IMG/VR virus record: IMGVR_UViG_3300027985_000843
Span: 1-64,000 of that record
Reading direction: 5' to 3' (one strand)
DNA: 64,000 nucleotides
The notes under the pieces were generated by a model. The model saw nothing but the letters and a program-made list of their open reading frames with translations, was not told where the DNA came from and searched no databases. A program made the position numbers and the translations under genes. Positions 537-63,795 of this stretch are shown one piece after another. Within the stretch, counting starts at the first letter, position 1, and each line of letters opens with the position of its first letter.

Positions 537-546
537 TCTACCTATG
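537..546 (+). promoter_or_regulatory. Class III (putative late) promoter motif
   Basis: TCTACCTATG, 13 nt before ATG 560. Confidence 0.65.
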
Positions 547-559
547 CCGCCGTGATGGC

Positions 560-1309
560 ATGGAGTCGATCATCGCAAAAGCTGTCAATCGGTACCTCGT
601 GGCGAAAGTCATCAACCGCTACCTCGACCGAATTGGGAGGGCGCCCTTCCAGATGTCCATGGGCGGATGGGACGGAGTCGACCACTACTGGCCGACCTTC
701 AAGGACTTCGAGAACTGGTCCGAGAAGCGTGACCGTTGGGGCCACACCTACGAGGCCATGTACCAATACGACAGCACGAGCGAGAGCGGCTTCGGTCCCA
801 CGCTCAACCTGTTCGTCGACTTCGACGCCGCCAAGTACGTCGACACGAGCGGCAGCCAACCGATCAAGTGGGAAGCCACCTTCCACGGATCATCCAAGAA
901 GGGCACGGTTCGGAAGGTCGAGGACATCCGAGGGCTGATGGACAACCTGATCCGGGAAGCCAAGAAGGTCCGCGACAAGATCCAGGACCAGCTCAGCAGC
1001 GCAGGCGGCACCAACTGGGACACGCACTTCGATGGGTACGAGCTTTCGGCTCAGTTCCACAGCCCTCATCCTGAGAGCGAAGCCAGCATGACCGTGGTCT
1101 TCGACGAGCCCGACGAGGTCCTGTTCGGGACCAGCGGCGAGAAGGGGAATGCCCGCATCTGGTTCTCACTCGGATCCGATTACGAAGGACACTTTGGCAA
1201 GAAAGAAGTCACCAAGTCCTACAAGACCACAGGTGACGTCGAAAAGGTCCTCAAGGAAGCCGAAAAGCTCTTCGATAAGTGGTACCAGGAAGCCCAGCCG
1301 AAAGACTGA
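560..1309 (+). CDS. Hypothetical protein, putative virion-associated, with two N-terminal xV(I)NRYL motifs
   Basis: MESIIAKAVNRYLVAKVINRYL; start reassigned to 560 from class III motif spacing. Confidence 0.7.
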   Translation: MESIIAKAVNRYLVAKVINRYLDRIGRAPFQMSMGGWDGVDHYWPTFKDFENWSEKRDRWGHTYEAMYQYDSTSESGFGPTLNLFVDFDAAKYVDTSGSQPIKWEATFHGSSKKGTVRKVEDIRGLMDNLIREAKKVRDKIQDQLSSAGGTNWDTHFDGYELSAQFHSPHPESEASMTVVFDEPDEVLFGTSGEKGNARIWFSLGSDYEGHFGKKEVTKSYKTTGDVEKVLKEAEKLFDKWYQEAQPKD

Positions 1310-1336
1310 CTCGGCCTCCACCCCTTCCCAGCCAAC

Positions 1337-1343
1337 CGGTGTA
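1337..1343 (+). promoter_or_regulatory. Class II promoter motif upstream of tRNA
   Basis: CGGTGTA, 11 nt before tRNA 5' end. Confidence 0.65.
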
Positions 1344-1354
1344 TGTTCTGACCT

Positions 1355-1430
1355 GGGTCCGTCGTCCAGTGGTTAGGGCAGCGAATTTTAATCTCGCCTA
1401 TCGGGGGTTCGAATCCCCTCGGACCCGCCA
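1355..1430 (+). tRNA. tRNA with apparent TTA anticodon (ochre suppressor); Glu/Gln-like body; encoded CCA
   Basis: Acceptor GGGTCCG/CGGACCC, D arm GTCC-AGTGGTTA-GGGC, anticodon arm GCGAA-TTTTAAT-CTCGC, T arm GGGGG-TTCGAAT-CCCCT, 3' GCCA. The tRNA call is firm; the anticodon register is less so. Confidence 0.88.
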
Positions 1431-1449: not shown

Positions 1450-2349
1450 ATGGCAACGTTCGAAGACAGGGCACGGCTCCTGGACAGTATCGACATACAG
1501 TACATCCAGGCGTCTAAGTGGAAAGACAAGCGACGTCAGGACCTGGAGCTGTTCGAATCGGTCGAGCTGCCCCTGGACCCCGACCACTGGTGTAGCCTGT
1601 GCATGAGCGAGGGAGCCTCCTACGTCGGAGGCTGCTGCGGGACCATGTCCCACGTCCAGGACCTGCTCGAACATGTCTTCCGCATGGGTAACGGATACAT
1701 CCGGATGAATCAGTTCGCCAATCTCGTCGAAGCCATCCTCGATCACGGCGACTTCGAAGGGAAGATCCGGTTCGACAAGTTGGATCGGTCCATCGAAGAC
1801 ATCGCGGCAGAAGCCAAGGACTGTAGCGTGTGGGAGAGCTACAGCCCCTGGGATCTCATCGCCCTCACCTGGCACCTGACCAAGGACTTCTACTCCCCCA
1901 AGACGCCTACTCCGTACAACCAAGACTTCTCCGAGGTCGAGAAGGCCATCCACACCCTGCATCACGGGGCGTCGACCCTGAGCTGGGCCCTTCTGTGTCA
2001 AAAAACCAGTACCCCCGACGGCGAGTTCGATCTGGCGAGCCAGAGCCGGGGCAACCGTTCCGTGCTGCTGTACCGGCTCATCCCCGCCCTCAGGACGCTG
2101 TTCAATCGAATCGACGAGCTTGACGCTGGCCCCTTCGATGGCGTGGCACTCGTGGACACAGAGATCGACCGCAACGCCATCGCCCACAACAACCTCGGGC
2201 TGTGCATCTTCGGTTCGGAAGAAGACGCTCGCAAGCTCGTTGCCTTGTTGGACGAGGACGAAGCCAAGAAGATCGAACTGCGCCCCGTACAGGTCTCGAA
2301 AGAAAACGGCGTCGTTTTCAAAGATTCTTCCGAACCTGCCAAGCTCTAG
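1450..2349 (+). CDS. Hypothetical protein
   Basis: Long ORF; ATG 1450 follows the tRNA with an AAAGGG SD-like element. Confidence 0.7.
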   Translation: MATFEDRARLLDSIDIQYIQASKWKDKRRQDLELFESVELPLDPDHWCSLCMSEGASYVGGCCGTMSHVQDLLEHVFRMGNGYIRMNQFANLVEAILDHGDFEGKIRFDKLDRSIEDIAAEAKDCSVWESYSPWDLIALTWHLTKDFYSPKTPTPYNQDFSEVEKAIHTLHHGASTLSWALLCQKTSTPDGEFDLASQSRGNRSVLLYRLIPALRTLFNRIDELDAGPFDGVALVDTEIDRNAIAHNNLGLCIFGSEEDARKLVALLDEDEAKKIELRPVQVSKENGVVFKDSSEPAKL

Positions 2350-2364
2350 CCCCGTAGTAGGGGC
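2330..2364 (+). promoter_or_regulatory. Class I (putative early) promoter
   Basis: CCGAAC-N17-CGTAGTA-N5-ATG(2365); only copy with a 17-nt spacer. Confidence 0.8.
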
Positions 2365-2877
2365 ATGACTACCTCAAACACCGAAATCAAGGTTGGCGAC
2401 TACGTCCGAAGCTTCGACTTTGCGAATCCTCGCGATGCTGAAGAAAACCGCGACCTGACCGGCCCGAACGCCTCCTACGTCGAGGGTACCGTCGTCGAAA
2501 TCGGCAAGGGCGACCCCGACGAGAACCCTGCGGGCTACACCTGCTACAAGATTCTCGTCCAAAAGTGGGTCTTGCATGGTAAGCCCATGAAGACCGGCGG
2601 CCACGTGTACCCGCCCGTCAACGGAACCCCCTCTTGGCTCGGTGGCTTCACTAATGGTGTCGAGAAGATCACCGTCACTCCGGTCACCGTCGAGCTGGGC
2701 GCCTACAATGGCAGCCCTTCCATCATCGCCAAAATGGAAGAAACCCTCAAATACATCGAGGATGGAGCCAAGTCGTGGGCCGGGACCCAAGAGGAATACG
2801 AAAAGTGGGCCCTGGACATCGCCAGCGGCATGCTCGTCTCAATCTCCACCAAGCTCGTGACGAAGGCAGCAAAATGA
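2365..2877 (+). CDS. Hypothetical early protein
   Basis: ORF directly after class I motif; N-terminal SH3-like IKVGDYV pattern. Confidence 0.75.
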   Translation: MTTSNTEIKVGDYVRSFDFANPRDAEENRDLTGPNASYVEGTVVEIGKGDPDENPAGYTCYKILVQKWVLHGKPMKTGGHVYPPVNGTPSWLGGFTNGVEKITVTPVTVELGAYNGSPSIIAKMEETLKYIEDGAKSWAGTQEEYEKWALDIASGMLVSISTKLVTKAAK

Positions 2878-3629: not shown

Positions 3630-3682
3630 ATGAAGGGGGTGCGATCGTTCTCAGGGCCGACTCAACCAAGACACCGAAAATT

Positions 3683-3716
3683 CCGAACCTCTTCCGAGAT
3701 GGAGCGTAGTAGGGAC
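3683..3716 (+). promoter_or_regulatory. Class I promoter
   Basis: CCGAAC-N16-CGTAGTA-GGGAC-ATG(3717). Confidence 0.85.
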
Positions 3717-4259
3717 ATGAGCATCGAATTCACCTCTGACTGCCCCACCACCGAAACCACGAAGCCTGAGCCCTGCCTCTGTGCCCAGATGGCGGAACGG
3801 TGGATCGATGCCATGGATGGCGACTGGTCCGAGGCCGTCAAGGTCAACCTCAAGGCGGAAGCCAACCCCGCGTGCCCCTTCTGCAAGGGCACGGGTATTG
3901 AGGGATTCACCCGCGACGACCGCCCCCACATCAACTGGGCGAACGACAACGGTGTCCGCGTCCTCGCGACCCTGGGCATTGTTGGCGAAGATGCCCCCTA
4001 CGGCGAGATGACCATTGCGGAGGCCAGAAGGGCCGTCATGCGGGCCCGCTCTCGCTCCGACCTCTCTGCCTACACCCGGGAGGAAGAAGTTCGCCACGGG
4101 GCCCCCAGGGCCGACGAGAACGGTGTAGTAGAGCTGAAGCCCCTTCGGGTCTACAGCCCCTCCCTGGACGAGAACTCTATCCAGGATCGTATCGAGCAGT
4201 TCGCTCACTTCGTCGAGGAGTCTGCCGCCCGAGGAGCCACCCTCGTTCGTTGGGGTTAA
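3717..4259 (+). CDS. Hypothetical protein with CxxCxGxG zinc motif
   Basis: CPFCKGTG; start reassigned from class I motif. Confidence 0.7.
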   Translation: MSIEFTSDCPTTETTKPEPCLCAQMAERWIDAMDGDWSEAVKVNLKAEANPACPFCKGTGIEGFTRDDRPHINWANDNGVRVLATLGIVGEDAPYGEMTIAEARRAVMRARSRSDLSAYTREEEVRHGAPRADENGVVELKPLRVYSPSLDENSIQDRIEQFAHFVEESAARGATLVRWG

Positions 4260-4262: not shown

Positions 4263-4484
4263 ATGAACAAGACACATCGAGCCGGAGTTCGGTACTCAGA
4301 CGGAAAGCAATGGTTCGCTCGCGGCAACTATCGGTCCTTCCTGACTGCGGAAGCTGCCGCAACCCGGTTGGCAAGGCCCACAGGGTCCCTGCCTCTCGTG
4401 AAGACCCCAGAGGGCAGCATCTTCTCTATCTGGGGCCCCGATCTGCCTTCGTACTGTTTCGGGTTGAAAGTTCCGAACCCTTGA
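4263..4484 (+). CDS. Small hypothetical protein
   Basis: ORF 3 nt after the upstream TAA, in frame with it. Confidence 0.55.
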   Translation: MNKTHRAGVRYSDGKQWFARGNYRSFLTAEAAATRLARPTGSLPLVKTPEGSIFSIWGPDLPSYCFGLKVPNP

Positions 4485-4506
4485 CGGCCGGGAGCGTAGT
4501 AGAAGC
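4473..4506 (+). promoter_or_regulatory. Class I promoter
   Basis: CCGAAC-N16-CGTAGTA-GAAGC-ATG(4507). Confidence 0.85.
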
Positions 4507-4788
4507 ATGAACACCAACAGCGAACTGCGGGCCATTGTCGAGAACCTCTGCACCAATCTCTCTACCAACAAGGTCCCCTGCAAGACCAACCACGTCGTTC
4601 TGAGCTTCGGCTGTGCCAATGGTGAATGGGCCTGGGGTATCGTGGTTGCAGCCGTCGGGAGCGTCGCCTCCAAGCATAAGGGCTACCGCCCTCGCCTCTG
4701 CGGAGAGGGTGAGACTCCTTCGGCAGCCATCGACGACATGCTGTCCGCACCGGCCTACGGTCGATGGCGTAAGGACCTCGCAAAATAA
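4507..4788 (+). CDS. Hypothetical early protein
   Basis: ORF directly after class I motif. Confidence 0.65.
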   Translation: MNTNSELRAIVENLCTNLSTNKVPCKTNHVVLSFGCANGEWAWGIVVAAVGSVASKHKGYRPRLCGEGETPSAAIDDMLSAPAYGRWRKDLAK

Positions 4789-4790
4789 TT

Positions 4791-4824
4791 CCGAACCCTT
4801 GACCTCCGGGAGCGTAGTAGAGAC
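4791..4824 (+). promoter_or_regulatory. Class I promoter
   Basis: CCGAAC-N16-CGTAGTA-GAGAC-ATG(4825). Confidence 0.85.
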
Positions 4825-4959
4825 ATGACGACCTCAACCAACCCCACCTACACCGCTGCCCAACGCCGCTTCTGGGCCCCCAAGGGACAGCGGAACTACT
4901 ACCAGCATGCTGTCGCCCGTTACCGCCGTCCTTCCGATGCGGCTGTCCTTCTTTCGTAA
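4825..4959 (+). CDS. 44-aa early microprotein (absent from ORF track)
   Basis: MTTSTNPTYTAAQRRFWAPKGQRNYYQHAVARYRRPSDAAVLLS*, ATG at exact class I spacing. Confidence 0.6.
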   Translation: MTTSTNPTYTAAQRRFWAPKGQRNYYQHAVARYRRPSDAAVLLS

Positions 4960-5448: not shown

Positions 5449-5990
5449 CCACCCTCAAGCCTCCGTACCGATTCCGAGACATTCCATGCTTCACGCCCTT
5501 CACGGGCTATTCGGTGGACGTCTCGTGGCAGCATTTGGAGTCTCACATCAAGGCTGAGACGGAAGGGGCCAACGTCGACTTCAACCCCGACTTCCAGCGG
5601 GGCCATGTGTGGCCGATGAGCAAGCGGATCGCCTATGTCGAGTTCGTTCTGCGAGGTGGCAACTCAGCCAACAACCTGTACTTCAATTGCGGATCGTATC
5701 AGTTGGTGAGCGGGCCGCCCCGGGAGTACGTCCTTGTGGACGGCAAACAACGGCTGACCAGCGTCCGGATGTTCCTCAACGATGAGGTACCCATCTTCGG
5801 TGGCCTCGTCCGCAGTGACTTCGTGGACAGGCCCGACTTCCTCAAGGCCCGGTTCCGGTGGAACGTCAACAGTCTCCAGACGCGGGCAGAGATCCTCCAA
5901 TGGTACCTCGATCTCAACACCGGTGGTGTAGTCCATACGGACGCAGAGATCGAGCGGGTCCGCAAGCTGCTGGAAGCGGAGAAGGCGTGA
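5445..5990 (+). CDS. DUF262 (GmrSD N-terminal, ParB/Srx-like) domain protein
   Basis: NPDFQRGHVW and VLVDGKQRLTSV motifs, LNTGG. Confidence 0.85.
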   Translation: MTTLKPPYRFRDIPCFTPFTGYSVDVSWQHLESHIKAETEGANVDFNPDFQRGHVWPMSKRIAYVEFVLRGGNSANNLYFNCGSYQLVSGPPREYVLVDGKQRLTSVRMFLNDEVPIFGGLVRSDFVDRPDFLKARFRWNVNSLQTRAEILQWYLDLNTGGVVHTDAEIERVRKLLEAEKA

Positions 5991-6042
5991 TGACCCCAAA
6001 GGTGGCCCACAACCTATTGAATGGTGGGACTACGAGGCAGCC

Positions 6043-6351: not shown

Positions 6352-7646
6352 CACATCATGAGCTGAGGTGGCGTTGCTCAATCTCGACCTGTTGTCACGA
6401 AAACCGTGGTCGGGACAAGAATTGCCGGAACTGTGGCAAGCCAAAGGAAGGGGAGGTGTTCTACGACCCCGAAGAGGGCGAGGGCCCCGCCCTCACGGAT
6501 GCGGTCCTCATCCAGCAAGCAACAGCTGGAACTGACTGGCAGTGCACTTTCTGTGGCTCGCATCAACGACGCAGCAGCGGAGAGTGCGCCAACTGCGGAG
6601 CTGAGCAAGCCATGAGCCGCGACCAGGCGACCAAGTGGGACGATGGTCACGTGGGTGAGGGTGGCCTAAGCCCGGCAGAAGAGGAACGTGTCGAGGCCCT
6701 GCTGAAGGCTGCGAAGCGTGTCGAGGCCCTGCCCAAGCCCAAGCGTCGCCCCAAGCTGACAGATGAGGACGTCGAGGAGATCTGCTCGGAAGACCCCTCC
6801 CCATCTTCCACTGTCATTGCAACCCCGGTGCCCGTCTACCGGCGAAACTATCGGCCTTTGGCCCTTGGCAGTGCCTTGTTCTTCGGAATTCTACTTCTTG
6901 GGGCCCTGGTCTTCTTCTTAGTTCGGCCTGTGGAAGTGGATGCCCGTGTTCAGGGCGTCTCATGGAAATACACGGTCCAGGTGGAGCGGGAGAAGACTGT
7001 GCACGAGGAAGGGTTCGACGCTCCCATCGGGGCCTTCGATGTGCTTCCCATGGGGGAGAGGCATCACCACTACCGACAGGTGCCGGACGGCTTCAGGACG
7101 GTGAGCTACCTGGAGGAATACCAGTGTGGGACTATTCCTCGGACCTGTACGCGCACACCCAGGACCTGCACACGCACGCCTCGAACCTGCACGAACAACC
7201 AAAACGGTTTCAAGACGTGCATGGGTGGGGATGAAATATGCTCGGGAGGACAGGAGAGTTGCACCGGCGGCGGCCCAAGGTATTGCACTCGCCCGGCCAC
7301 AAGGCAGGAGCCCAAGTTCCGGGACGAGTCGGTCACGGCCATGTGGTACTCGTGGAACGTGTGGCGATGGGTCCTGGACCGGCAGGTGAAGGCAGAGGGC
7401 TCAACAGACAAGCCTCATTGGCCGTCAGCCGAGAAGATTGCCCTCAACAAGAATCTGCCCAATGGTGTCCGGGCGGAGAGGGAGGAAAGGGTCACGAGCT
7501 ATACGGTGACCTTCCGGGATGACGAAGGAGAGAGCTACACGTACCACCCGAAAGAGATTGGCGAGTTCGAGAGCTTCCACGCTGGTGAGCCCCAGCTCAT
7601 CAAGGTCAACAAGCTGGGCAGTGTCGAGATTGTGAGGGCCCAGTGA
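6342..7646 (+). CDS. Zinc-finger, single-TM, Cys-rich membrane protein
   Basis: Two N-terminal W-x-C..C..N..C..CG fingers, TM LALGSALFFGILLLGALVFFLV, Cys-rich distal region. Confidence 0.75.
   Translation: MPVTHHELRWRCSISTCCHENRGRDKNCRNCGKPKEGEVFYDPEEGEGPALTDAVLIQQATAGTDWQCTFCGSHQRRSSGECANCGAEQAMSRDQATKWDDGHVGEGGLSPAEEERVEALLKAAKRVEALPKPKRRPKLTDEDVEEICSEDPSPSSTVIATPVPVYRRNYRPLALGSALFFGILLLGALVFFLVRPVEVDARVQGVSWKYTVQVEREKTVHEEGFDAPIGAFDVLPMGERHHHYRQVPDGFRTVSYLEEYQCGTIPRTCTRTPRTCTRTPRTCTNNQNGFKTCMGGDEICSGGQESCTGGGPRYCTRPATRQEPKFRDESVTAMWYSWNVWRWVLDRQVKAEGSTDKPHWPSAEKIALNKNLPNGVRAEREERVTSYTVTFRDDEGESYTYHPKEIGEFESFHAGEPQLIKVNKLGSVEIVRAQ
7137..7193 (+). repeat. Degenerate 21-nt tandem repeat encoding (PRTCTRT)x~3
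   Basis: Protein reads PRTCTRTPRTCTRTPRTCT with synonymous divergence between units. Confidence 0.8.
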
Positions 7647-7954
7647 CTCCCGCTGAATTCTACGGTAAATGCTGGAACATCCTCGTGGAGCACGCAGGGG
7701 CAAACCCGAAGCCGATCGCTAAAAAGGACTTCGTTCTCAGCATGTTGGGATCTTGCCACGAGTATCGGTTTTGCGGCAGCCTCGGATTCGGAGGTAAATT
7801 TTATCGATTCAGCCCAGACTTCTACGTCCAGTGCTACCCTGAGGACGTGACCCCTGAGCGGCAGAAAGCGATCGACAAGGTCAACCATTTGCTCAAGGCA
7901 TTGGTGGGTGACCTGGTACACGAACAAGGCCCGAATGACCGCCAGCGTCTTTGA
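7643..7954 (+). CDS. Hypothetical protein
   Basis: GTGA overlap; EYRFCGSLGFGGKF. Confidence 0.6.
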   Translation: MTPAEFYGKCWNILVEHAGANPKPIAKKDFVLSMLGSCHEYRFCGSLGFGGKFYRFSPDFYVQCYPEDVTPERQKAIDKVNHLLKALVGDLVHEQGPNDRQRL

Positions 7955-8270
7955 CGTCGCCCTCGCCATCCTCCAGAAGCATGGCCCCATGACGGCCATG
8001 AAGCTCCAAAAGCTCGTCTACTACTGCCAAGCCTGGCACCTCGTGTGGGAGGGTCGGCCCATGTTCCGCGAACGCATCGAGGCATGGGCAAGTGGCCCTG
8101 TTGTGCCTGAGCTGTACGAGGCTCATCGAGGCAAATTCATGGTGAGCTTCGATGACATCCTTCTGTATTGCGTCGATCACCACTGGGATGCCATCATCGA
8201 GGCTTACGACCGGTACCGCAGGGAGCTGACAGGTATCCCTTCCGGGACACAGATGCTCCTGTTCCCCTAG
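7935..8270 (+). CDS. Panacea/DUF4065 (SocA/GepA-like) antitoxin-domain protein
   Basis: VFDVA...MTAMKLQKLVYYCQAWHL...IEAWASGPVVPELY; C-terminus appears shortened. Confidence 0.85.
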   Translation: MTASVFDVALAILQKHGPMTAMKLQKLVYYCQAWHLVWEGRPMFRERIEAWASGPVVPELYEAHRGKFMVSFDDILLYCVDHHWDAIIEAYDRYRRELTGIPSGTQMLLFP

Positions 8271-8987
8271 CTCTTTTTTGGCAGGTCATCAACGGTCGGC
8301 GATTCCGGGGCCCACAGGGCCTTCTCAACACGCACGAAGCTTGGACGGGACCCGTGCTCCGATCCGTCTGAGAAGAGCCTCCAGGCCCCTTCCCGGGCTG
8401 TTATGACGGTGATCAGGTCGGGCTCGCCACCCTTGTCTCCCTCAAAGTCCAAAATGAGTCTGCGGATTCCCGACATCGTCAGGAACGTCACCACCTTGCC
8501 ACCTACTATGTACCGGTTCATGGTACCGGAGCGAGGGCATAAAAAGACTTGCACTCTATCCAAATTCGGATTCATACTACACCTGAAGCAGCAATCTCCG
8601 CGAGAAGGGCGGCACTTCGCACAACCTAGGAGATAGTCATGGTCATCAGTACAATTCCAGGCCAACCTTCCGTTCTACCCGACAACGCCGAGGTCCAGCT
8701 TATTCGTGGGGCCTATAATCCGGACGGCTTCCTTGACAGCACCCTCTTGGAGATTTGGGTGCAAGTGCCTAAGGGGTCTGTGCCTTCCTCGGCTTGTGGG
8801 GTGTACGGGCCCAAATACAACTACTGCCAGCTTCAAACGTTTGGAAGCCTCAGGGTTAAGGTTGTCGATCGTGAAGTGATCGTCCGCGCACGCAAGACTG
8901 GAGAGGTCCAGGTTGATGGCGTCACCGTGACGCATTGCCGAGCCGCTGTAAAAGGCGAGGCGAGTGCAGATTTTGCTGTCGCTCAAT

Positions 8988-9923
8988 CTACTCGGCGTCC
9001 TGTCTTGCGCCCTGTGCGATCAGAGCCCATGGCTCAAGCATGAAGGTAGGGTCGTCCAAAGCCTTCTTAATGACCTCCACGCAGTCGGCCACCCTCTCAC
9101 GAAGGTCGTGCTCCCAGAACCGAAAGATTCTCCACCCAGGAGCGTGGGCTAGGTTCCTCTCGTGTTTGGTTCTGGTGACGGCTCTCCGTTTCTTGTAGCG
9201 GCTGGCGTGCTCTGGGCAACCGTGCCAAAAGCACCCGTCTACCTCGATGGCAATCTGCTTTTCTGGATGAGCTTCATCCACGAAATACAAGAGCTGGTAC
9301 TCCGTCTGGAACCCGTCGTATAGGCGGGCTTCTTGAAGAGCTGCGATCAAGTCACGGTGTGGCTTGGTGAGGGTGTAGATCGGCTGTAGTCGTCCCTCTC
9401 GGTGCATCTTGGTCGTGGCTGCACTGATCTTGGCTCGAACCTCCAATCGACTCTGTGGGGCAACGTAGCCAGGTTGGGCTCGTAGTTGAGCGAGGGCTTC
9501 TTGTGAAGCTTGCACCATACAAGCCACATCCTCTCGGGCTTTCGGTGTCTTCTGGTACCCCTCTTTTCGGGTGGCTCCGCACTTCTGATGATCGATCTGC
9601 TGCCGTGCCGTGTCCAGTTGAGCACGCCCTTCTGGAGTCGAAGCTCTAGCTTTTGCCGATCGACTCAGTTTTGCCCGAACCTCGGGGCGTTTCATGTGGT
9701 GCTTGTCCCCCTTGGCCCGTTGTGCTCGGGAGACTCCAGCCCCCACCTTCTGGCGGATCTCCTCACTTCTCTCGATGGGGGCTAGGTAGTCCGGAGCCTT
9801 GAGGGATGACTTCCCGAACCTCTCAGCGTACTCCTCTCGGGTCAACCCGTGTTCCCGCTGGAGGTGTTTCCTGGTGATGTACTGGCCGAAGGGCTTACCG
9901 CATAGCTGACAGATTGCTGGCAT
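8988..9923 (-). CDS. Vsr/DUF559-like putative homing endonuclease with N-terminal zinc finger and NUMOD3-like repeats
   Basis: CQLCGK..KHLQREHG; repeated EVRAKIS/EVRAKLS; IAIEVDGCFWHGCPEH...GWRIFRFWEHD. Confidence 0.8.
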   Translation of the reverse strand: MPAICQLCGKPFGQYITRKHLQREHGLTREEYAERFGKSSLKAPDYLAPIERSEEIRQKVGAGVSRAQRAKGDKHHMKRPEVRAKLSRSAKARASTPEGRAQLDTARQQIDHQKCGATRKEGYQKTPKAREDVACMVQASQEALAQLRAQPGYVAPQSRLEVRAKISAATTKMHREGRLQPIYTLTKPHRDLIAALQEARLYDGFQTEYQLLYFVDEAHPEKQIAIEVDGCFWHGCPEHASRYKKRRAVTRTKHERNLAHAPGWRIFRFWEHDLRERVADCVEVIKKALDDPTFMLEPWALIAQGARQDAE

Positions 9924-9966
9924 AACCTACCGTTACATGAGAAGATTCCCATGTCAAGTCGGCAAG

Positions 9967-10855: not shown

Positions 10856-10903
10856 GACAAGAGAAAAAGCCGAACTCTGCCGGCCGGCGACCGTAGTAGA
10901 GGC
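10856..10903. promoter_or_regulatory. Divergent class III (-) and class I (+) promoters
   Basis: Minus: TTCTCTTGTC-N13-ATG(10842). Plus: CCGAAC(10870)-N16-CGTAGTA-GAGGC-ATG(10904). Confidence 0.8.
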
Positions 10904-11155
10904 ATGAGAACACGACTCGGAACCAAGCCTTTTCAGGCAGCAGCCGTGCTGTTGCTGAACCTTCGCGTATCTCGGAACACGTGTAACCCCTTTGTCAAGG
11001 CAGGCTTCACCTTGCTCGAAAAACGTGGCCTGGTTGAACTACGAAAAGGGGTGTACCGCCCAGCAGGGAACTTCTTTGATGTGTGCGAAGAAGTGGGGTT
11101 GACTTCCGACGGGTACGCCACTGATGAGGCCAAAAACGAGGCCAAGAAGAGCTAA
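10904..11155 (+). CDS. Hypothetical early protein
   Basis: Start reassigned from class I motif. Confidence 0.65.
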   Translation: MRTRLGTKPFQAAAVLLLNLRVSRNTCNPFVKAGFTLLEKRGLVELRKGVYRPAGNFFDVCEEVGLTSDGYATDEAKNEAKKS

Positions 11156-13010: not shown

Positions 13011-13015
13011 TTCTT

Positions 13016-17820: not shown

Positions 17821-18393
17821 TCACAAGAAGATGGACGGATCTTCGCACAGTTGCTTGAGTTGTTCAACCTTCCACGGGTCCACGTCTTCCGCCGCCGGCA
17901 ATGGGGGCATCAGGAAGGGGCCCGCCGCCCGAGCGACAACGACCTCTTGAGCTGCGGCGCCTTGGTCCGATGTGGGAAACACCAGGGTATTCTTGAGCCC
18001 GGACACCTCCAGCATGTACTTGAGGTGCTCCTCGTCCTGTTCGCTGCCCGTCGGCCACCCCTCGTCGCGAGGCCACACACGGCCGTCCCACCCGTAGCGG
18101 TCCAGGGCGGCCACGATGTTGTTGAGCGTCTCCTCGAAGACGGGCAGCTCGACTTGCAAGGTACCCCCCGGCTTCGAATCGACGGGATTTTTGGGCAGGA
18201 GCAAGACGGACAGCATCACGAGAGGTGTTTCCGTGGCCTCTCTGACCCCAATCCACCCAAAGAGGGGGAGCGACAGGAATGTTCCCTTGACCGGCTCGGA
18301 CAGAACTTTGCCCACGGGCAGCATTCGGTGATCGACGCCGGTCGCACCCGTGGGACGGGCCATCTTGTTTTTTCGCTTGTCACTGATCTTCAT
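17821..18393 (-). CDS. Hypothetical protein
   Basis: Class II motif (18405-18411) 11 nt upstream. Confidence 0.65.
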   Translation of the reverse strand: MKISDKRKNKMARPTGATGVDHRMLPVGKVLSEPVKGTFLSLPLFGWIGVREATETPLVMLSVLLLPKNPVDSKPGGTLQVELPVFEETLNNIVAALDRYGWDGRVWPRDEGWPTGSEQDEEHLKYMLEVSGLKNTLVFPTSDQGAAAQEVVVARAAGPFLMPPLPAAEDVDPWKVEQLKQLCEDPSIFL

Positions 18394-26873: not shown

Positions 26874-27215
26874 TCACACAAGAGAACTAGGCGGCATGGC
26901 CTCCAGCTGTACTACGTGGATACCCTCCCGACCCTCCCGCCAAGCTCGAATCAACCGATGACACCCGTCGCCAATGAATCCCTCTGGTGTCAGAATGATG
27001 GGGTAGCTCAAGTCCGCATTCTCGATGCGGTTCAAGTGATCAAGGATCTCACGCACAGACAGAGGACCTGCCGACCAGGTGTGGCTGTCTAGCAGCTCCT
27101 CGATGTCGACCACTTCGTCAAGCGACAACCATACGGGCTCGATACCCTCAGCAGCCGCCCACAGGTCTTTCACATCCCACGTCTCTTCGCCGTTGCTGTA
27201 GGTGTGGGGTTCCAT
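26874..27215 (-). CDS. ParB/Srx-like domain protein
   Basis: ADLSYPIIL...IGDGCHRLIRA. Confidence 0.8.
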   Translation of the reverse strand: MEPHTYSNGEETWDVKDLWAAAEGIEPVWLSLDEVVDIEELLDSHTWSAGPLSVREILDHLNRIENADLSYPIILTPEGFIGDGCHRLIRAWREGREGIHVVQLEAMPPSSLV

Positions 27216-44712: not shown

Positions 44713-44756
44713 GGTGGTCTCCTGTTGTCTGCTACCAGAAGACCACCATAAGTAGA
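44711..44756 (-). promoter_or_regulatory. Class III promoter overlapping an RBS-sequestering hairpin
   Basis: TCTACTTATG; stem ATGGTGGTCTTCTG/CAGGAGACCACCAT (14 bp, one G-U) covers AGGAG and the AUG. Confidence 0.75.
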
Positions 44757-46593: not shown

Positions 46594-47248
46594 CAACCCT
46601 GTGCTGGTTTTCCAGCATGCCCACGCGGAAGTCCTGGACCACTTCCAAGCCCAAGGCGCCTACGGTCGCGAGGGCTGGCTCAGCATCGGAGCTGTCGAGA
46701 ACTTCGTTTTCCACGCCAGTCGGCTGAACGGTAACTGGGGTGTCGTATGGGGGCTCCTCGACACGGAGTACCTCGTGCTCGATGAGCCCCTTCGATCCAT
46801 GGTCGATTCGGGCAAGTACATCGACCTCTTCAGAGCCATATGGGAAGTCCGCTTCCAGCTCAGTGAGGGCGCCGACGTGCGACGTCTCGTCGATGATATC
46901 GCCCAGTGGCTCAACACAGGGGACCCCTGCCCACAACTCGGACTCGGGCAGCTCACCCAACAGCAACAACTCGACAACCTCCTGTTCCTACTCACCCTCG
47001 CTGCTCAGAACGAGCTGGTTCGGCCAGCCATGTTCGTCTACGCACGTATTGACCGGGCCGCTGAACAAGAAGACAAGGTGTTCAAAAAACGCCTTCTAAA
47101 CGGCTTACTTACCCTCATTAAGCTTATTGAACGCTGGGCCCCTTTGGGGAGTCCAGCATCTTTGCTGCTGAGCCTCTCTGACACGCACAAGCTCGATAGC
47201 CGCCTGCGAGCCAAGATCGAGTCTCTTCTTGTGCCCCCGGAAGTGTGA
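46574..47248 (+). CDS. Hypothetical protein
   Basis: 224-aa ORF in operon. Confidence 0.65.
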   Translation: MIQPTPDNPVLVFQHAHAEVLDHFQAQGAYGREGWLSIGAVENFVFHASRLNGNWGVVWGLLDTEYLVLDEPLRSMVDSGKYIDLFRAIWEVRFQLSEGADVRRLVDDIAQWLNTGDPCPQLGLGQLTQQQQLDNLLFLLTLAAQNELVRPAMFVYARIDRAAEQEDKVFKKRLLNGLLTLIKLIERWAPLGSPASLLLSLSDTHKLDSRLRAKIESLLVPPEV

Positions 47249-55195: not shown

Positions 55196-55603
55196 ATGAA
55201 CGAACAAGACATCCGCCGAGAAGCCGCTGAGAAGGCTCTGCCGAAGTTTGAGCGAGCCCTGGATAAGCTACGTGATGAAGAACATGTCCTGGTGGACTAT
55301 CGCCTCTTCAAGCTGATTCCCCAAGACGAAGTCATCGAATCCGTCGACAAGCAAGCCGCCGAACTGGGAAAGAGCTTCCAAGGAGCCATCTACTTCTGCA
55401 AGGAGAACTTCGACGCTCTTCGGGAAGGGCAGACCGCGCACCTGTCCTTCTATGGGTTGGGCGTACGGGACTCGGCCTCCCTCGGCCACCTTATCGTCAA
55501 GTATCTCTACGAGGAGGGTTTGAACGTCAAGTGGCCGGGAGACCCCTGCTTCACGATCAACGTGGACCCGTGCCCACAGCTCAACCAGACGGACGAGAAC
55601 TAG
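55196..55603 (+). CDS. Hypothetical protein (DUF6891-like)
   Basis: LG..IV..L..EGL.V.W.GD....I.V. Confidence 0.55.
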   Translation: MNEQDIRREAAEKALPKFERALDKLRDEEHVLVDYRLFKLIPQDEVIESVDKQAAELGKSFQGAIYFCKENFDALREGQTAHLSFYGLGVRDSASLGHLIVKYLYEEGLNVKWPGDPCFTINVDPCPQLNQTDEN

Positions 55604-56208
55604 TCTTCCTCGCCCTCGTCCATCAGCTCAAAGGCTGCGTCTTGAAGAGCTTCGTCCAGCTTCCTCGCCGCTGGGCCAGTCTTGCTCGCCACGTACTTCG
55701 ACAGGTCGCGAATGGTGAATCGAGGATCCACGAACAGCACGTCCCAGTCACCATCCCATGTGCCCACGCCCGCTCCCTGGTGTTCCATGTAGTACAGGAA
55801 GCCGGCGCCGCCGCGCAGGTCCATCATCACCTCGACCACGTGCTCTGGCTTCTTGGCACTGCGGAGAGGGCCGACGCCCATCTTGAACAGGCCGATGTTC
55901 TTCTTCACCCAGTCGAGGAGCGCCTTCTCCACGGTCTTCTCGTAGGCTTCGGCGGCGGCCTCCACCTCATGAGGGACATCGGGGCTCCGAGCATCGCCGC
56001 CAACGGACATGACCTCTGTCTCCAGCAGACCCGTGAGCGTAGCGTTGTCAGACAGCTTGGCCGTTCGATCCAACTTGCCTTCGACCATGTAGGCGAGACG
56101 GATGAGGTTGCGGGCGACAGCTTTCCGGCTCGTGGGCTGACTGCGCTGGAAGGCGAGCATGCGAGCAAGTTGGCCCTGAACCTCGTCGATAGAAGCGACT
56201 TTGTGCAT
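55600..56208 (-). CDS. Putative late protein with MHKVAS leader
   Basis: N-terminus similar to 63363-63761; class III-like TCTGTTTATG (56233-56242) and GAGG SD. Confidence 0.7.
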   Translation of the reverse strand: MHKVASIDEVQGQLARMLAFQRSQPTSRKAVARNLIRLAYMVEGKLDRTAKLSDNATLTGLLETEVMSVGGDARSPDVPHEVEAAAEAYEKTVEKALLDWVKKNIGLFKMGVGPLRSAKKPEHVVEVMMDLRGGAGFLYYMEHQGAGVGTWDGDWDVLFVDPRFTIRDLSKYVASKTGPAARKLDEALQDAAFELMDEGEED

Positions 56209-60617: not shown

Positions 60618-62911
60618 GCATCATCCGCCGAAGCGACATCCTGGACTCCTCCGATGAGGTCCTCGTCGGACAATGGTACTGGGTCAATAGCGAGGACGGC
60701 CGATGGCTCGGATGCGTCATCCGTCTGGGCTCGAACTTTGTTGCATTGGAAGGTCCGGGCACTTGGAGCGTCCGGATCCTCAACGATGACTTCTGGAAGT
60801 GTTGTGAACGGGAATACGACCCCGACAAGGTCATCCACAGCGAGATCAACAAATACCGCAACCAAGTAGCCGAACTCACCGGCCAGGTGCGCGAGCTGAC
60901 AGCCCAGCTTTCCGTCGCTCCCTCCGACATGCTCCCTGAGAACGGAGGGGAGACCTGCGCCCTCGCCAAGATCGGCATGGGGCAGGACATCCACCAGTAC
61001 AAGGCAGACCTCATCAAAGCCAAAAACGAGACTCTGCCCGACCTGTTTTCGAAGATCAAGAAGGCCACTGAAGGGATGGCCCATTGGATGGAGGCCAAGC
61101 TCATCCCCCTCAAGGCGGAGACGTCCGCCATGCAGTCGAGCATCGACCACATCAAAGAGCGAATCTTCCATGTCCAGCTCTATGCCGGCCTCACCGAAGA
61201 CATCGCCCTGATTCAGGACGGAAACCCTGCACCGACCGAGACCCCGATCCACCTCATGCAGCGGCGCTGCTACATGGATGAGGAATGCCTGCTGGACTAC
61301 AAGGCGGGCGGCATGGAGTTCAAAAATATCGGCGAGTTCGATGCGTGGCTCACCAAGCCCGGCAACCTCAACCGTATCTTGCCGTTCCCTCGCACCGTCG
61401 TGTCCTTTCGCGTCCGTCGAATACGCAAAGAGCACGAGATCAACGCAATCAGCGACATCATCCGGGTAGGCGACCTCATCCAAGCCGACTGCGCAACGTT
61501 CCTGTACATCCGGAACGGCGAGCAGGTCTTTCGGATGAACACAAGCATCGACTTTGGGCCGAGGCTCTTCCCGGACCTCAACGACCGGCAGCTCAAGGGA
61601 GACAAACTGTGGGCCAAGATGTGGAGTGAGGGTAACGTCGACCGTCTGATCACGGATCGCGAGTACCAGGCCATCTACGAGAGTGACCACAAGGAATTGG
61701 CCGAATGGGAGGTCCTCCGGAAAGAAGACGCACGCAATAGGGCCCAGTGGGAGGCCGACAAGGCCGCCGGCAAAAACGTGCCCAAACGGTTCGAGGGTAA
61801 TCATCGGGCATGGTTCGCCCCACACACGTCATACCAGGACTACAAGCCCTTCAACAAGTCGCACGTCTACTACGATGACATCTGCGAGAAGGTTGCTAGC
61901 GACATCAAAGAGCACAACCGGATCGTGCTCATCCTCCAGGGGCTGCTCGACCGTTCCCCCGTCTTCCAACCCCACCCCAAGTGGGAGCTGTGGACTGCCA
62001 GCGGATTCGAGGCAGCCTTCACCCTCGTTCTAGATGACACCCGCACACTGCCTGCTGGCGAGAAGCCCGACTTCGAAGCCTACCGCCGCAAGTGCAATGC
62101 CTCCCTTAAGGACGGATCGATCACCGTAGGGCAGGAATACATGTGGGAAAAGGAAGAGGCGAGGAAGGAAAACGACAAGATGGCTGGCCGAGGTTATCGT
62201 GACCGGAGCATCGGCTACCACCGGTACCGCCCCTACGGCAACCCCGGGCCGGGCCTCGTTGCCCGCGTTGCCAAGCACACTCGGTCAGGCAAGTGCACCT
62301 ACGCTTGGATGAAGGAGAAGAGTACCAGGGAGGGCACGATTCGTTGCACCTTCACGTGCAGCCAGAAGCATGTGCTCAACGTCGAAGCCTACAAGCCGGG
62401 GGACTACCACATCTTCTTCGACGATCCCCGCACACGGCAGGAATACCTCCAGTGGGCCCCTTTGCTTCTGACCGCAGAGGACTATCACGCGGAACTCCTG
62501 AAGGTGAAGGACGTCCCCGATCCCCAACCAAAGAAGCAAAGTTCCTGGGAGGGCAAGGAACGCTACCGCTACCGGAAGCTTCACAAGGAACTCAGCGGTA
62601 AGGTGGTGCAGCTTGTAAACGACATCGAGATGAAGAACGGCCGCGTTTACAAGGCCGGAACCGTTTGGCGGGTCAGGGAGGGTGGGAGCGGGCGAGACTT
62701 CAGCCTCTCAGGCATCGATACAGACGGCGAGCATCTCGCACGTTGGATCAACGGTGCCCAGGTGTACGACTTCAAGGTCGTCGACGATCTACAGAAAGCC
62801 CTCGGAGAGATTCCGGAGTGCCAAGTAGAGGATCCCCCCGAAGGGGAGGAGACTGAGGAAAAGGTATACGATGACGATGAGGAGGACGACATTGGTCTTC
62901 ACCTGCCGTAG
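60614..62911 (+). CDS. Large hypothetical protein (765 aa)
   Basis: ATGA overlap; long ORF with typical codon usage. Confidence 0.8.
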   Translation: MSIIRRSDILDSSDEVLVGQWYWVNSEDGRWLGCVIRLGSNFVALEGPGTWSVRILNDDFWKCCEREYDPDKVIHSEINKYRNQVAELTGQVRELTAQLSVAPSDMLPENGGETCALAKIGMGQDIHQYKADLIKAKNETLPDLFSKIKKATEGMAHWMEAKLIPLKAETSAMQSSIDHIKERIFHVQLYAGLTEDIALIQDGNPAPTETPIHLMQRRCYMDEECLLDYKAGGMEFKNIGEFDAWLTKPGNLNRILPFPRTVVSFRVRRIRKEHEINAISDIIRVGDLIQADCATFLYIRNGEQVFRMNTSIDFGPRLFPDLNDRQLKGDKLWAKMWSEGNVDRLITDREYQAIYESDHKELAEWEVLRKEDARNRAQWEADKAAGKNVPKRFEGNHRAWFAPHTSYQDYKPFNKSHVYYDDICEKVASDIKEHNRIVLILQGLLDRSPVFQPHPKWELWTASGFEAAFTLVLDDTRTLPAGEKPDFEAYRRKCNASLKDGSITVGQEYMWEKEEARKENDKMAGRGYRDRSIGYHRYRPYGNPGPGLVARVAKHTRSGKCTYAWMKEKSTREGTIRCTFTCSQKHVLNVEAYKPGDYHIFFDDPRTRQEYLQWAPLLLTAEDYHAELLKVKDVPDPQPKKQSSWEGKERYRYRKLHKELSGKVVQLVNDIEMKNGRVYKAGTVWRVREGGSGRDFSLSGIDTDGEHLARWINGAQVYDFKVVDDLQKALGEIPECQVEDPPEGEETEEKVYDDDEEDDIGLHLP

Positions 62912-62976
62912 GGGCAGGGGGTAGCCGTGGCACTGAACCCACATGACCGCTAGGTCCCGCCGGTACTGTTCAAGGC

Positions 62977-63360
62977 TTACTCCTTCGGGTCTTCGTGGTG
63001 GCCTAAATCCCATGACTCGACATCATACACCGAACCGCCCTCCCGCACGCCCAGCTCTTCCTCACTGAGGTATTCGGGGTGCCACCCGGCATGCACCTCT
63101 TGGTGGCAGTTGGAGCACAGCAGCACGCACTTGCTCAGCTCGGGCTCGATGGCCTGCCACGACAGCCGAGAGCTGATTTCGAAGTCCTTCTCCCGTGGGT
63201 CCATGTGATGGAACACCATGGCTGCCGGGCACTTGTCGTAGCCGCAGATACGGCACTTGCCACCGAGGTGAGCGATGGCCCTGTCTTTGACCTCTCGACG
63301 CCGCTGGGCTGCCTCGAAGTTTCGCTGCCAGCGGGCGTCAAGTTTCTCTGCGATCGTCAC
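62977..63360 (-). CDS. HNH endonuclease
   Basis: GGKCRICGY.KC.AA..FHH.DP..KDF...ELSKCVLLCSNCH.EVH. Confidence 0.88.
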   Translation of the reverse strand: MTIAEKLDARWQRNFEAAQRRREVKDRAIAHLGGKCRICGYDKCPAAMVFHHMDPREKDFEISSRLSWQAIEPELSKCVLLCSNCHQEVHAGWHPEYLSEEELGVREGGSVYDVESWDLGHHEDPKE

Positions 63361-63362
63361 TG

Positions 63363-63761
63363 CTAGCGAGCTGCCTTGTCGATTCGCTCTTCGGCTCCCT
63401 TGCTAGGAGCTTGCGGCATTGTCGTGCGGAGACGCTCGCCTGCCCACTTGGCTAGGAGCTGGAAGTCCGTGTAACCATCGAGACCATGCTTATCAGCAGC
63501 CCGACCGAGCCAGTAGTCTGCCGGCTTCTCCCGGTCGTCGCCCATCATCTTGATAGCTTCCGATCGAATCTTCTGGAACAGCTGCTTGTACTTCGCCTTG
63601 GGAAGTTGACCCCCGGCACCTGCAACCCGATCGGCGATGTCCCGCAGCTTACCTGCTAGGACGTCGCGGTCGGGCTTGCCGCCGGGGCCGTGGCCCTGGA
63701 TGAAGGCCATCAGGGAGCGGAGTTCCGCTTGCAGCTCCTGGGGAGACGCGATCTTCTGCAT
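63363..63761 (-). CDS. Putative late protein with MQKIAS leader
   Basis: TCTTCCTATG-N13-ATG; N-terminus similar to 55600-56208. Confidence 0.7.
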   Translation of the reverse strand: MQKIASPQELQAELRSLMAFIQGHGPGGKPDRDVLAGKLRDIADRVAGAGGQLPKAKYKQLFQKIRSEAIKMMGDDREKPADYWLGRAADKHGLDGYTDFQLLAKWAGERLRTTMPQAPSKGAEERIDKAAR

Positions 63762-63774
63762 AGCCATGGTACGG

Positions 63775-63795
63775 CATAGGAAGATCCTCGGTGTA
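63775..63795. promoter_or_regulatory. Divergent class III (-) and class II (+) promoters
   Basis: CATAGGAAGA-tcct-CGGTGTA-N10-ATG(63806). Confidence 0.8.

What the first reader, a model, noticed from the sequence alone, without database searches (positions are those of the whole stretch)
537..63784. Class III motif TCTWCYTRTG-N13-start marks dispersed putative late genes
Seen with exactly 13 nt to the start: TCTACCTATG (560), TTCTCTTGTC (10842), TCTTCTTGTG (21833), TTCTCTTGTG (26863), TCTTCTTGAA (GTG 33467) and TCTTCCTATG (63761). Variants: TCTTCTCATG-N12 (9923), TCTTCTTGTG-N16 (47250), TCTGTTTATG-N24 (56208) and TCTACTTATG-N34 (44712); the last two have a real SD. These genes are scattered, often opposite to their neighbours, and often back-to-back with a class I or II promoter (10856-10903, 21784-21819, 63775-63795). 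Inference: the third tier of a three-step transcription cascade.
Basis: partly seen in the sequence, partly recalled or inferred. Interest (0 to 1): 0.7.

Follow-up and report, generated by a model that had tools for sequence, protein, structure and literature searches.

The report
Third promoter class in huge phage
A short T-rich DNA word placed exactly 13 bases before many start codons is a real, conserved third promoter type of an uncultivated 372-kb vent phage. It also sits in front of the head, packaging and tail-fibre genes, so it is probably the phage's late-gene switch.

Summary
The strict consensus occurs 6 times in the window against 0.62 expected. Genome-wide, ATG follows the motif at exactly N13 far more often than at any other distance.

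The window is the first 64 kb of a 371,739-bp virus record from a hydrothermal-vent metagenome.

- **Three start-anchored promoter classes.** An ECF-like class has TTCCGAAC-N16-CGTAGTA-N5-ATG (about 40 sites). A -10-like class has CCGGTG-TAnnnT-N6-ATG (about 80). The third is this motif (about 30).
- **Class III anatomy.** It is two-part: (G)ATCTnYTTRTG, ten bases, then GGY and a purine. That purine is the A of ATG at N13 sites, which would make the mRNA leaderless. At leadered sites a Shine-Dalgarno sequence follows.
- **Position.** Hits are mostly intergenic and co-oriented with the next gene.
- **Conservation.** The motif is kept at orthologous genes in related huge phages.
- **Gene content.** It is the only motif in the terminase-portal-protease module. 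It also precedes head-fibre and tail-fibre-like genes.

"Late" therefore fits the gene content, but no transcript data exist. The recognising factor and the order of the cascade are inferred. No phage RNA polymerase was found, while two sigma-like genes were.

The parts
535..546 (+). Class III motif GATCTACCTATG, N13 before ATG 560. Downstream gene 560-1309 (+), 249 aa, function unknown.
   Evidence: 14.8 bits, intergenic, co-oriented; no Pfam or PHROG hit
8538..8547 (-). Class III variant TCTTTTTATG, then N10-GGT-A. ATG 8521 lies at N16 (84-aa ORF 8267-8521).
   Evidence: (16.4 bits)
9936..9945 (-). Class III variant TCTTCTCATG, N12 before ATG 9923. Gene 8988-9923 (-), 311 aa, Ros/MucR-type zinc finger plus endonuclease-like domain (homing-endonuclease-like).
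10856..10865 (-). Class III motif TTCTCTTGTC, N13 before ATG 10842. Gene 9967-10842 (-), 291 aa, unknown. Back-to-back with class A CGTAGTA at 10892-10898 (+), which leads to ATG 10904.
17822..17831 (-). Class III motif TCTTCTTGTG (exact consensus), N13 before ATG 17808. 53-aa ORF 17647-17808. The motif overlaps the stop codon of the upstream gene.
   Evidence: 16.6 bits
21810..21819 (+). Class III motif TCTTCTTGTG, the best-scoring site in the genome (19.5 bits), N13 before ATG 21833. Gene 21833-22489 (+), 218 aa, unknown. Divergent from class B GGTGTA at 21784-21789 (-).
   Evidence: A related motif lies upstream of four of the five orthologous genes whose DNA was fetched, exact in one.
26877..26886 (-). 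Class III motif TTCTCTTGTG, N13 before ATG 26863. Gene 26663-26863 (-), 66 aa.
   Evidence: 13.7 bits
33481..33490 (-). Weak class III-like site TCTTCTTGAA, N13 before GTG 33467 (61-aa ORF 33282-33467). It lacks TRTG and is the least secure of the listed sites.
44747..44756 (-). Leadered class III site TCTACTTATG, then N10-GGT-A. The predicted 21-nt leader carries the SD AGGAGA. ATG 44712. Gene 44227-44712 (-), 161 aa.
   Evidence: (15.8 bits)
47224..47233 (+). Class III motif TCTTCTTGTG, then N10-TGT-G. ATG 47250 lies at N16, giving a predicted 3-nt leader. Gene 47250-47771 (+), 173 aa. The motif lies in the 3' end of the upstream gene.
   Evidence: 15.7 bits
56233..56242 (-). Leadered class III site TCTGTTTATG, N24 before ATG 56208. 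The SD starts at the predicted TSS. Gene 55600-56208 (-), 202 aa.
63775..63784 (-). Class III motif TCTTCCTATG (with GA upstream), N13 before ATG 63761. Gene 63363-63761 (-), 132 aa. It shares a 44-nt divergent intergenic region with class B GGTGTA at 63790-63795 (+), which leads to ATG 63806. That leaves no room for another promoter.

Best explanation
Class III is a core promoter, the third sequence class used by this huge phage and its relatives.

**Anatomy**
- The upstream element is (G)ATCTnYTTRTG.
- Ten unconserved bases follow, then GGY and a purine.
- I take that purine, 14 nt after the motif, as the transcription start site (TSS). The motif then lies at -24 to -14, and GGY at -3 to -1.

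**Two flavours**
- Where the purine is the A of ATG (the N13 sites), the mRNA is leaderless. This explains the rigid spacing and the missing SD.
- Elsewhere a short leader follows, often beginning right at the SD.

**Enzyme (inferred)**
- The host RNA polymerase is probably redirected by a phage-encoded specificity factor.
- Classes A and B show the same G-pyrimidine-purine start context and the same leaderless geometry, which fits a shared core enzyme.

**Timing (inferred)**
- Class III drives the head and packaging module, head-fibre and tail-fibre-like genes, and scattered accessory genes. It is therefore most likely the late class.

**Shown versus inferred**
- Shown: motif enrichment, spacing, strand bias, conservation and gene association.
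- Inferred: the TSS position, the enzyme or factor, and the timing.
For: **Fixed spacing to ATG.** 9 of 36 motif copies have ATG at N13 against at most 2 at any other offset. The unbiased 6-mer scan gives z=7.9.

**Intergenic and co-oriented.** 24 of 30 PWM hits of at least 14 bits are intergenic (18% expected); the reversed matrix gives 3 of 11. Of 31 intergenic hits, 26 point at the next gene.

**A second element at a fixed distance, independent of the start codon.**
- Among 23 intergenic non-N13 hits, GT sits at +12/+13 in 10 (binomial p=3.9e-7). Coding hits give 6 of 39.
- GGT sits at +11 to +13 in 9 of those 23. The genome-wide GGT frequency is 1.9%.
- In 6 of the 11 strong N13 sites, RGY precedes ATG (read). 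The background is 7.3%.

**No room for another promoter.** The divergent intergenic region at 63762-63805 is only 44 nt.

**Footprinting against the 241-kb relative G002 (about 70% nt identity).**
- The motif and exact N13 spacing are kept at the protease orthologue, while the flanks have diverged.
- Motifs are kept at 5 of 6 SD-led sites, with a TATG/TGTG swap at the head-fibre gene.

**More distant relatives.**
- Four of the five fetched orthologues of gene 21833 carry a related motif; in one it is the exact TCTTCTTGTG. Three of the five end in GGT-ATG.
- Classes A, B and III co-occur in relatives L145 and L146.
- Across 37 related records there are 24 N13 hits against 13 for the control. 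Eleven of the 24 end in RGY-ATG.

**Gene content.** Terminase, portal and protease lie at 201-212 kb. Only class III-like motifs occur in that module. The motif also precedes a gp80-like head-fibre gene and a tail-fibre-like protein.

**Class B start position.** A tRNA 5' end lies 11 nt after a class B GGTGTA, where the N10/N11 rule predicts a TSS.

**Sigma-like genes, no polymerase.** Two sigma-like genes are present. No phage RNA polymerase was found.
Against: - No TSS or expression data exist for this phage. Only DNA runs hold it.
- With the TSS at +14, no TAnnnT-like -10 hexamer is conserved at -12 to -7. That is unusual for a sigma70-family holoenzyme and leaves the melting mechanism unexplained.
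- The record is estimated 78% complete, and divergent phage polymerases can escape Pfam and PHROGs. A phage enzyme is therefore not excluded.
- The window's own class III genes have no structural annotation.
- N13 sites are rare in most relatives (0-3 per genome). The nearest relative shows no genome-wide N13 peak, although it lacks most of the 'arms'.
- The helicase orthologue uses class B in G002.
- Gene calls come from my own simple caller (82% coding), so some 'intergenic' labels may be wrong.
- The major capsid, tail sheath and tail tube genes were not identified.
Confidence: 0.6

Rival explanations
1. phiKZ-style initiator promoter. A phage-encoded non-canonical RNA polymerase would recognise TRTG and start at its last G. 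N13 genes would then carry a 14-nt leader with no SD.
For: - phiKZ late promoters are defined by TATG, with the final G as the TSS (PMC4666361).
- The motif here ends in TATG or TGTG, and the genome is jumbo-sized.
- The record is only about 78% complete.
Against: - No RNA polymerase signal was found: Pfam Rpb1, Rpb2 and T7-type models on the whole record, PHROGs on about 50 of the largest proteins, and a catalytic-motif scan that found only one chance hit in a 155-aa protein.
- A/G interchange at the third-last base is tolerated at orthologous sites, whereas every TATG position matters in phiKZ.
- This model does not explain the conserved GGY-purine 11-14 nt downstream, or the exact N13 distance to ATG.
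Confidence: 0.1
2. The motif is an operator or activator site for a phage DNA-binding protein, placed next to weak promoters, rather than a core promoter element itself.
For: - A widely conserved 225-aa protein with a sigma region-4-like helix-turn-helix (HTH) plus a second helical HTH domain is encoded at 218306-218983. This lies just upstream of the first class III site of the head module.
- The conserved block is about 11 bp, the size of a protein-binding site.
Against: - The motif is asymmetric and strictly co-oriented with genes.
- It keeps a 1-nt-precise distance to the start point and to the GGY element.
- No other promoter element is visible beside it.
- If the bound protein positions the polymerase, this model merges with the main explanation.
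Confidence: 0.15
3. The motif acts in the RNA, as a pyrimidine-rich 5'-UTR element. It could be a translational enhancer or ribosomal-protein-S1-type site for genes lacking an SD, transcribed from promoters further upstream.
For: - N13 genes lack an SD and the motif is U-rich in a 59% GC genome.
- Huge phages that encode possible rpS1 proteins often lack SD sequences (PMC7162821).
Against: - In divergent intergenic regions there is no space for an upstream promoter: 44 nt at 63762-63805, and the back-to-back pair at 308215/308223.
- SD-led genes carry the motif too, at variable distance from ATG but fixed distance from GGY.
- The motif region shows no general secondary structure: mean z -0.29, and 5 of 31 sites below -2.
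Confidence: 0.05
4. Chance clustering of a T-rich word, or codon-usage noise.
For: The backwards-read control pattern also occurs 8 times in the genome. Single-mismatch hits are mostly in coding DNA.
Against: Shuffle test, spacing peak, intergenic and orientation bias, the downstream GGY element and conservation at orthologous sites.
Confidence: 0.01

Closest known systems
Extended -10 (TGn / Gram-positive -17 TRTG -14) promoters, including the middle and late promoters of Thermus phage P23-45
   Same: With the TSS at the A of ATG, the TRTG at the 3' end of the motif falls exactly at -17 to -14, the position of the Gram-positive TRTG extension (PMC2613000). There is no -35 element. In P23-45, phage middle and late genes use this -35-independent class after a phage protein remodels the host polymerase (PMC3950348).
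   Different: No TAnnnT -10 hexamer follows at -12 to -7. Conservation instead extends upstream to -24 (ATCTnYT). The factor is unknown.
Leaderless-mRNA promoters, as mapped in Mycobacterium (title of PMC3898074, listed) and known to me from Deinococcus and other Actinobacteria
   Same: The promoter is anchored at a fixed distance to the ATG, there is no SD, and the start context is pyrimidine-purine. Classes A and B of this phage have the same geometry.
   Different: In those bacteria the anchoring element is the -10 TANNNT, 6-7 nt from the ATG. This is my own knowledge; I did not open the paper. In class III the anchoring element ends 13 nt from the ATG.
phiKZ non-virion RNA polymerase late promoters (TATG)
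   Same: A jumbo phage, a late class, and a short motif ending in TATG (PMC4666361).
   Different: In phiKZ the G of TATG is the TSS and the enzyme is phage-encoded. Here no phage polymerase was found, A/G varies at the third-last base, and a second element 11-14 nt downstream points to a later start.
Sigma-cascade temporal programmes of large phages (T4 gp55 with TATAAATA; SPO1 gp28 and gp33/34). From my own knowledge, not checked here.
   Same: Several promoter classes with distinct consensus sequences, phage-encoded sigma-like proteins, and structural genes served by the last class.
   Different: The consensus sequences are unrelated. Here the element lies upstream of the usual -10 position. 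No homologue of gp55 or gp28 was sought or found.

Membership tests
sigma70-family extended -10 promoter | TG at -15/-14 (TRTG at -17 to -14 in Gram-positives) | tested here: met
   With +1 taken as the A of ATG at N13, the motif ends in T(-17) R(-16) T(-15) G(-14). This depends on the inferred TSS.
sigma70-family extended -10 promoter | -10 hexamer TAnnnT/TATAAT at -12 to -7 | tested here: not met
   Only a weak T at -10 is conserved between the motif and GGY. Class B of the same genome does show TAtgtT there.
sigma70-family extended -10 promoter | Transcribed by a holoenzyme with a sigma70-family factor | not testable with these tools
   No host, no RNA and no biochemistry. Sigma-like genes are present.
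Leaderless-gene promoter | Promoter element at a fixed distance from the start codon, with no SD | tested here: met
   Sharp N13 peak. The spacers have no SD and end in RGY.
Leaderless-gene promoter | The transcript 5' end coincides with the start codon | not testable with these tools
   No RNA runs hold this sequence.
phiKZ-type late promoter | Phage-encoded multisubunit RNA polymerase | tested here: not met
   No hits to PF00623 or PF00562 (their controls rang); no hit to PF00940, but its control rang nowhere, so that absence is uninformative. No PHROG polymerase among about 50 large proteins. The record is about 78% complete, so absence is not proven.
phiKZ-type late promoter | Invariant TATG with the TSS at the G | tested here: inconclusive
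   TRTG is conserved, but A/G swaps occur at orthologous sites. The TSS is not mapped.
sigma54 (-24/-12) promoter | GG at -24 and GC at -12, spaced 10 bp apart | tested here: not met
   The consensus ATCTTCTTGTG has no GG...GC pair.
Phage late promoter class | Lies upstream of virion and packaging genes | tested here: met
   It is the only motif in the terminase-portal-protease module, and it precedes head-fibre and tail-fibre-like genes. The major capsid, sheath and tube genes were not identified.
Phage late promoter class | Activated late in infection | not testable with these tools
   There is no cultured host and no transcriptome.

The most novel reading that the evidence does not exclude
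Class III would be a previously undescribed mode of bacterial promoter recognition, shared by a widespread clade of uncultivated huge phages.
- It would have no -10 hexamer. Specificity would rest on a duplex element at -24 to -14 plus a GGY-purine initiator.
- It would be read by host polymerase carrying a novel phage factor. One candidate is the conserved 225-aa protein with a sigma-4-like domain and a second HTH, encoded at the replication/structural boundary.
- It would yield leaderless late mRNAs.
Probability: 0.25. Interest if true: 0.75.

Novelty: new variant of a known kind. Interest (0 to 1): 0.5.

Why it matters
- **Annotation.** Huge phages known only from metagenomes are mostly unannotatable; most proteins here hit nothing. 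A three-class promoter code conserved in the relatives examined gives a sequence-only way to sort their genes into likely co-regulated sets. It also fixes true start codons, because leaderless genes begin at the promoter-defined ATG, and it flags unknown proteins that travel with virion genes.
- **Mechanism.** A promoter whose conserved part sits at -24 to -14 with no -10 hexamer would be an unusual way to direct a bacterial polymerase. It also offers candidate phage factors to test.
- **Caveat.** Timing and mechanism still need experiment.

Tried and rejected
- **Hairpin or terminator idea.** A few sites (175330, 201380, 218051) have the motif in the loop of a stem. Across 31 sites the mean z is -0.29, and the 201380 stem is not kept in G002. 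Rejected.
- **Class III as a degenerate class B.** Both can end in TATG, but the distance to ATG differs by 4-5 nt. Class B always has TA where class III has R. Rejected.
- **Phage RNA polymerase.** Three Pfam models, PHROGs on the large proteins and a D-x-D-G-D scan gave nothing. One ADFDGD lies in a 155-aa protein with no polymerase similarity.
- **Major capsid protein.**
  - The highly conserved 450-aa protein after a class III site folds as FnIII/Ig-like beta-sandwiches, not as an HK97 capsid.
  - The 411-aa protein after the protease looks scaffold-like, with only a third of it conserved.
  - Atlas and PDB searches of two further candidates gave nothing.
  - Terminase and T4-capsid Pfam models missed, but PHROGs found terminase, portal and protease.
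- **Cultured relatives.** None were found by DNA. Protein hits were distant only. The 347-kb relative G001 uses a different motif, TAAATA-N5-ATG.
- **RNA evidence.** Only two DNA runs hold the sequence.
- **SD at a fixed distance from the motif.** There is only a mild bump at 13-14 with a loose pattern. I treat it as suggestive for named sites only.
- **TAA recoding (because of the tRNA).** Not supported.

Full report
**What the window is.** The window is the first 64 kb of a 371,739-bp linear IMG/VR virus record with 59% GC and an estimated completeness of 78%. Its DNA is held only in two metagenome runs, one labelled hydrothermal vent. No cultured phage is close. I called genes with a home-made Markov caller, which gave 387 genes and 82% coding. 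This is conservative and misses small genes.

The genome has two 'arms', at 0-64 kb and about 250-372 kb, with short genes on both strands. Between them lies a central block at 64-250 kb that is entirely on the minus strand.

**The observation.**
- TCTWCYTRTG occurs 6 times in the window against 0.62 expected, and 0 of 100 shuffles reached 6.
- The spacing claim is the stronger test. Genome-wide, 9 of 36 copies of TCT[AT]C[CT]T[AG]T have ATG exactly 13 nt after the tenth base, and no other offset has more than 2. For TTCTTGT the figure is 13 of 93.
- An unbiased scan of every 6-mer against every distance to ATG recovers the motif (TCTTGT, d=14, z=7.9). It ranks behind GGTGTA at d=10 (55 of 257), GTAGTA at d=5 (40 of 155) with CCGAAC at d=28, a CRISPR repeat, and the Shine-Dalgarno (SD) word.

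**Three promoter classes.**
- **Class A** is TTCCGAAC-N16-CGTAGTA-N5-ATG. Its AAC...CGT layout is that of ECF-sigma promoters, which I state from my own knowledge.
- **Class B** is cCGGTG-TAtgtT-N6-ATG, a proper TAnnnT hexamer at -12 to -7 if the A of ATG is +1.
- Both classes end in G-C-ATG, so both imply leaderless mRNAs.
- A tRNA at 1355-1430 begins 11 nt after a class B GGTGTA. That is the start point predicted from the ATG spacing.
- The window holds about 11 class A, 21 class B and 12 class III sites.

**Anatomy of class III.**
- Eleven strong N13 sites give the consensus (G)ATCTTCTTGTG at -24 to -14, then unconserved bases, then mostly RGY before ATG.
- A position weight matrix (PWM) built from N13 and leadered sites finds 30 hits of at least 14 bits, 24 of them intergenic against 18% expected. 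The reversed matrix finds 11 hits, 3 intergenic. Of 31 intergenic hits, 26 point at the next gene. The matrix was seeded from intergenic sites, so this test is partly circular. The consensus, spacing and 6-mer tests are not.
- Among the 23 intergenic hits not followed by ATG at N13, positions +11 and +12 are G in 14 each and +13 is T in 11. GT at +12/+13 occurs in 10 of 23 (p=3.9e-7), against 6 of 39 in coding hits. GGT occurs in 9 of 23, against a genome frequency of 1.9%.
- The element is therefore two-part, motif-N10-GGY-purine, and its second half is placed relative to the motif rather than the start codon.
- The simplest reading is that the purine is the transcription start site (TSS). 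At N13 sites it is the A of ATG. At SD-led sites a leader follows, and in several it begins right at the SD (172577, 122662, 56208, 175309, 218018).
- The stem-loops seen at a few sites are not general.

**Conservation.**
- The 450-aa protein after one class III site has more than 1,300 homologues at 58-73% identity on contigs up to 620 kb. This defines a large clade of huge phages.
- The nearest relative, G002, is 241 kb, has 83% identity in that protein, and is about 70% identical in nucleotides. It is syntenic with 86-313 kb of this genome.
- At the papain-like protease gene, G002 keeps the motif and the exact N13 spacing while the flanks have diverged.
- Five of six SD-led sites keep the motif. 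At the head-fibre gene, TATG has become TGTG, which unites the two spellings.
- The helicase orthologue instead has a class B promoter in G002.
- Orthologues of window gene 21833 on other metagenomic contigs (54-58% identity for the three that end in GGT-ATG, 42% for the fourth) carry related motifs. One has the exact TCTTCTTGTG.
- A 20-kb piece of a 441-kb relative holds all three classes, including motif-N10-GGT-G-ATG sites.
- Across 37 related records, N13 hits outnumber the control 24 to 13, and 11 of the 24 end in RGY-ATG. The more distant G001 uses another motif.

**Which genes carry it.**
- In the window: unknowns of 53-291 aa, plus a zinc-finger/endonuclease protein.
- In the right arm: a papain-like protease, an AAA ATPase, a DUF5661 protein, and a collagen-like tail-fibre-type protein that follows one of the two best-scoring sites in the genome.
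- In the central block: PHROGs place large terminase at 210556-212415, portal at 206975-208807 and prohead protease at 201394-202884. The 198-218 kb module has class III-like sites at 218051, 209427, 204496 and 201380, and no clear class A or B site.
- Other class III sites precede:
  - a gp80-like head-fibre gene (PF23140, E 8.6e-47);
  - an IPT/TIG protein;
  - two phrog_5417 proteins;
  - the conserved 450-aa FnIII-like protein.
- Class B precedes replication genes such as ligase, and sits in the polymerase region.

Gene content therefore supports 'late'. The major capsid, sheath and tube genes were not found, and no timing data exist.

**Which enzyme.**
- No RNA polymerase was detected.
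- A 303-aa protein with sigma region 2 sits behind a class A promoter.
- A 225-aa protein at 218306-218983 lies between the replication genes and the first class III site of the head module. It models with confidence (pLDDT 88.8).
  - It has a sigma region-4-like domain at about 1 Å rmsd to SigF, SigR and SigD region 4, followed by a second helical HTH domain.
  - A profile of its family matches sigma region 4 at E 8e-10, and the family has 563 cluster representatives.
  - It is a candidate specificity factor, no more than that.
- With the inferred TSS, TRTG sits at -17 to -14, the place of the Gram-positive extended -10 (PMC2613000). No -10 hexamer follows, so class III fails that membership test.
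- P23-45 shows that phages can shift host polymerase to -35-independent promoters for middle and late genes (PMC3950348).
- phiKZ's TATG, which starts at the G (PMC4666361), is the main rival. It does not explain the downstream GGY or the N13 rule.
- Huge phages encoding their own sigma70 have been noted before (PMC7162821).

**Verdict.** The motif is a genuine, conserved, two-part promoter-like element (promoter: about 0.8). The late-class reading fits gene content (about 0.55). The TSS and the factor are inferred. It is a new variant of a known kind of system, a phage temporal promoter class, with an unusual architecture.

Noticed in passing
G000 351,630-352,940 (+), outside the window (locus L023 about 7630-8940); orphan copy in the window at about 5986-6030 (+): A CRISPR array of about 19 copies of a 36-nt repeat with about 36-nt spacers. 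Directly upstream, a 740-aa protein (349180-351402) matches Cas12m by sequence (PDB 23vw_A, E 3.4e-20). One diverged repeat copy lies alone inside the window.
   Followed up: partly
window 1355-1430 (+): A tRNA with anticodon TTA, which would read the UAA stop, sits 11 nt after a class B GGTGTA (1338-1343). Reading TAA as sense barely raises ORF cover (0.82 to 0.85), so there is no sign of recoding.
   Followed up: partly
window 2328-2365, 3681-3717, 4471-4507, 4789-4825, 10867-10904, 13014-13050, 51399-51435 and others: Class A promoters, TTCCGAAC-N16-CGTAGTA-N5-ATG, look like ECF-sigma promoters and give leaderless genes. There are about 40 in the genome, nearly all in the arms. The phage's own sigma-region-2 gene (282948-283859) has one upstream, which suggests autoregulation.
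   Followed up: partly
window 48029 (+); G000 162206, 255503, 268269, 276381, 364929: A small set of canonical TTGAC[AC]-N16-18-TAnnnT promoters: 8 in the genome, 6 intergenic. Some combine TTGACC with the class B GGTGTA -10 region. One drives a LAGLIDADG endonuclease gene without a leader.
   Followed up: no
G000 308215-308234: Two class III motifs on opposite strands overlap back-to-back and share a central GATC. Seven of the 11 strong N13 sites begin with GATC, a Dam-type methylation site.
   Followed up: no
window 35823-37514 (+): A 563-aa protein carries a peptidoglycan transglycosylase (GT51) domain, E 1.4e-45.
   Followed up: no
G000 218306-218983 (-): The best long Foldseek match of the sigma-4-like 225-aa protein is the RpoE chain of an 'RNA-guided transcription complex' (9n9q_C, prob 0.98 but TM 0.24). 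This is curious given the Cas12m-like gene in the same phage, but the match is weak.
   Followed up: no
loci L047 and L049 (relatives), downstream of the 450-aa gene: Related phages encode a protein with the Pfam family 'Volactin' (PF25216) within the conserved structural-gene neighbourhood.
   Followed up: no
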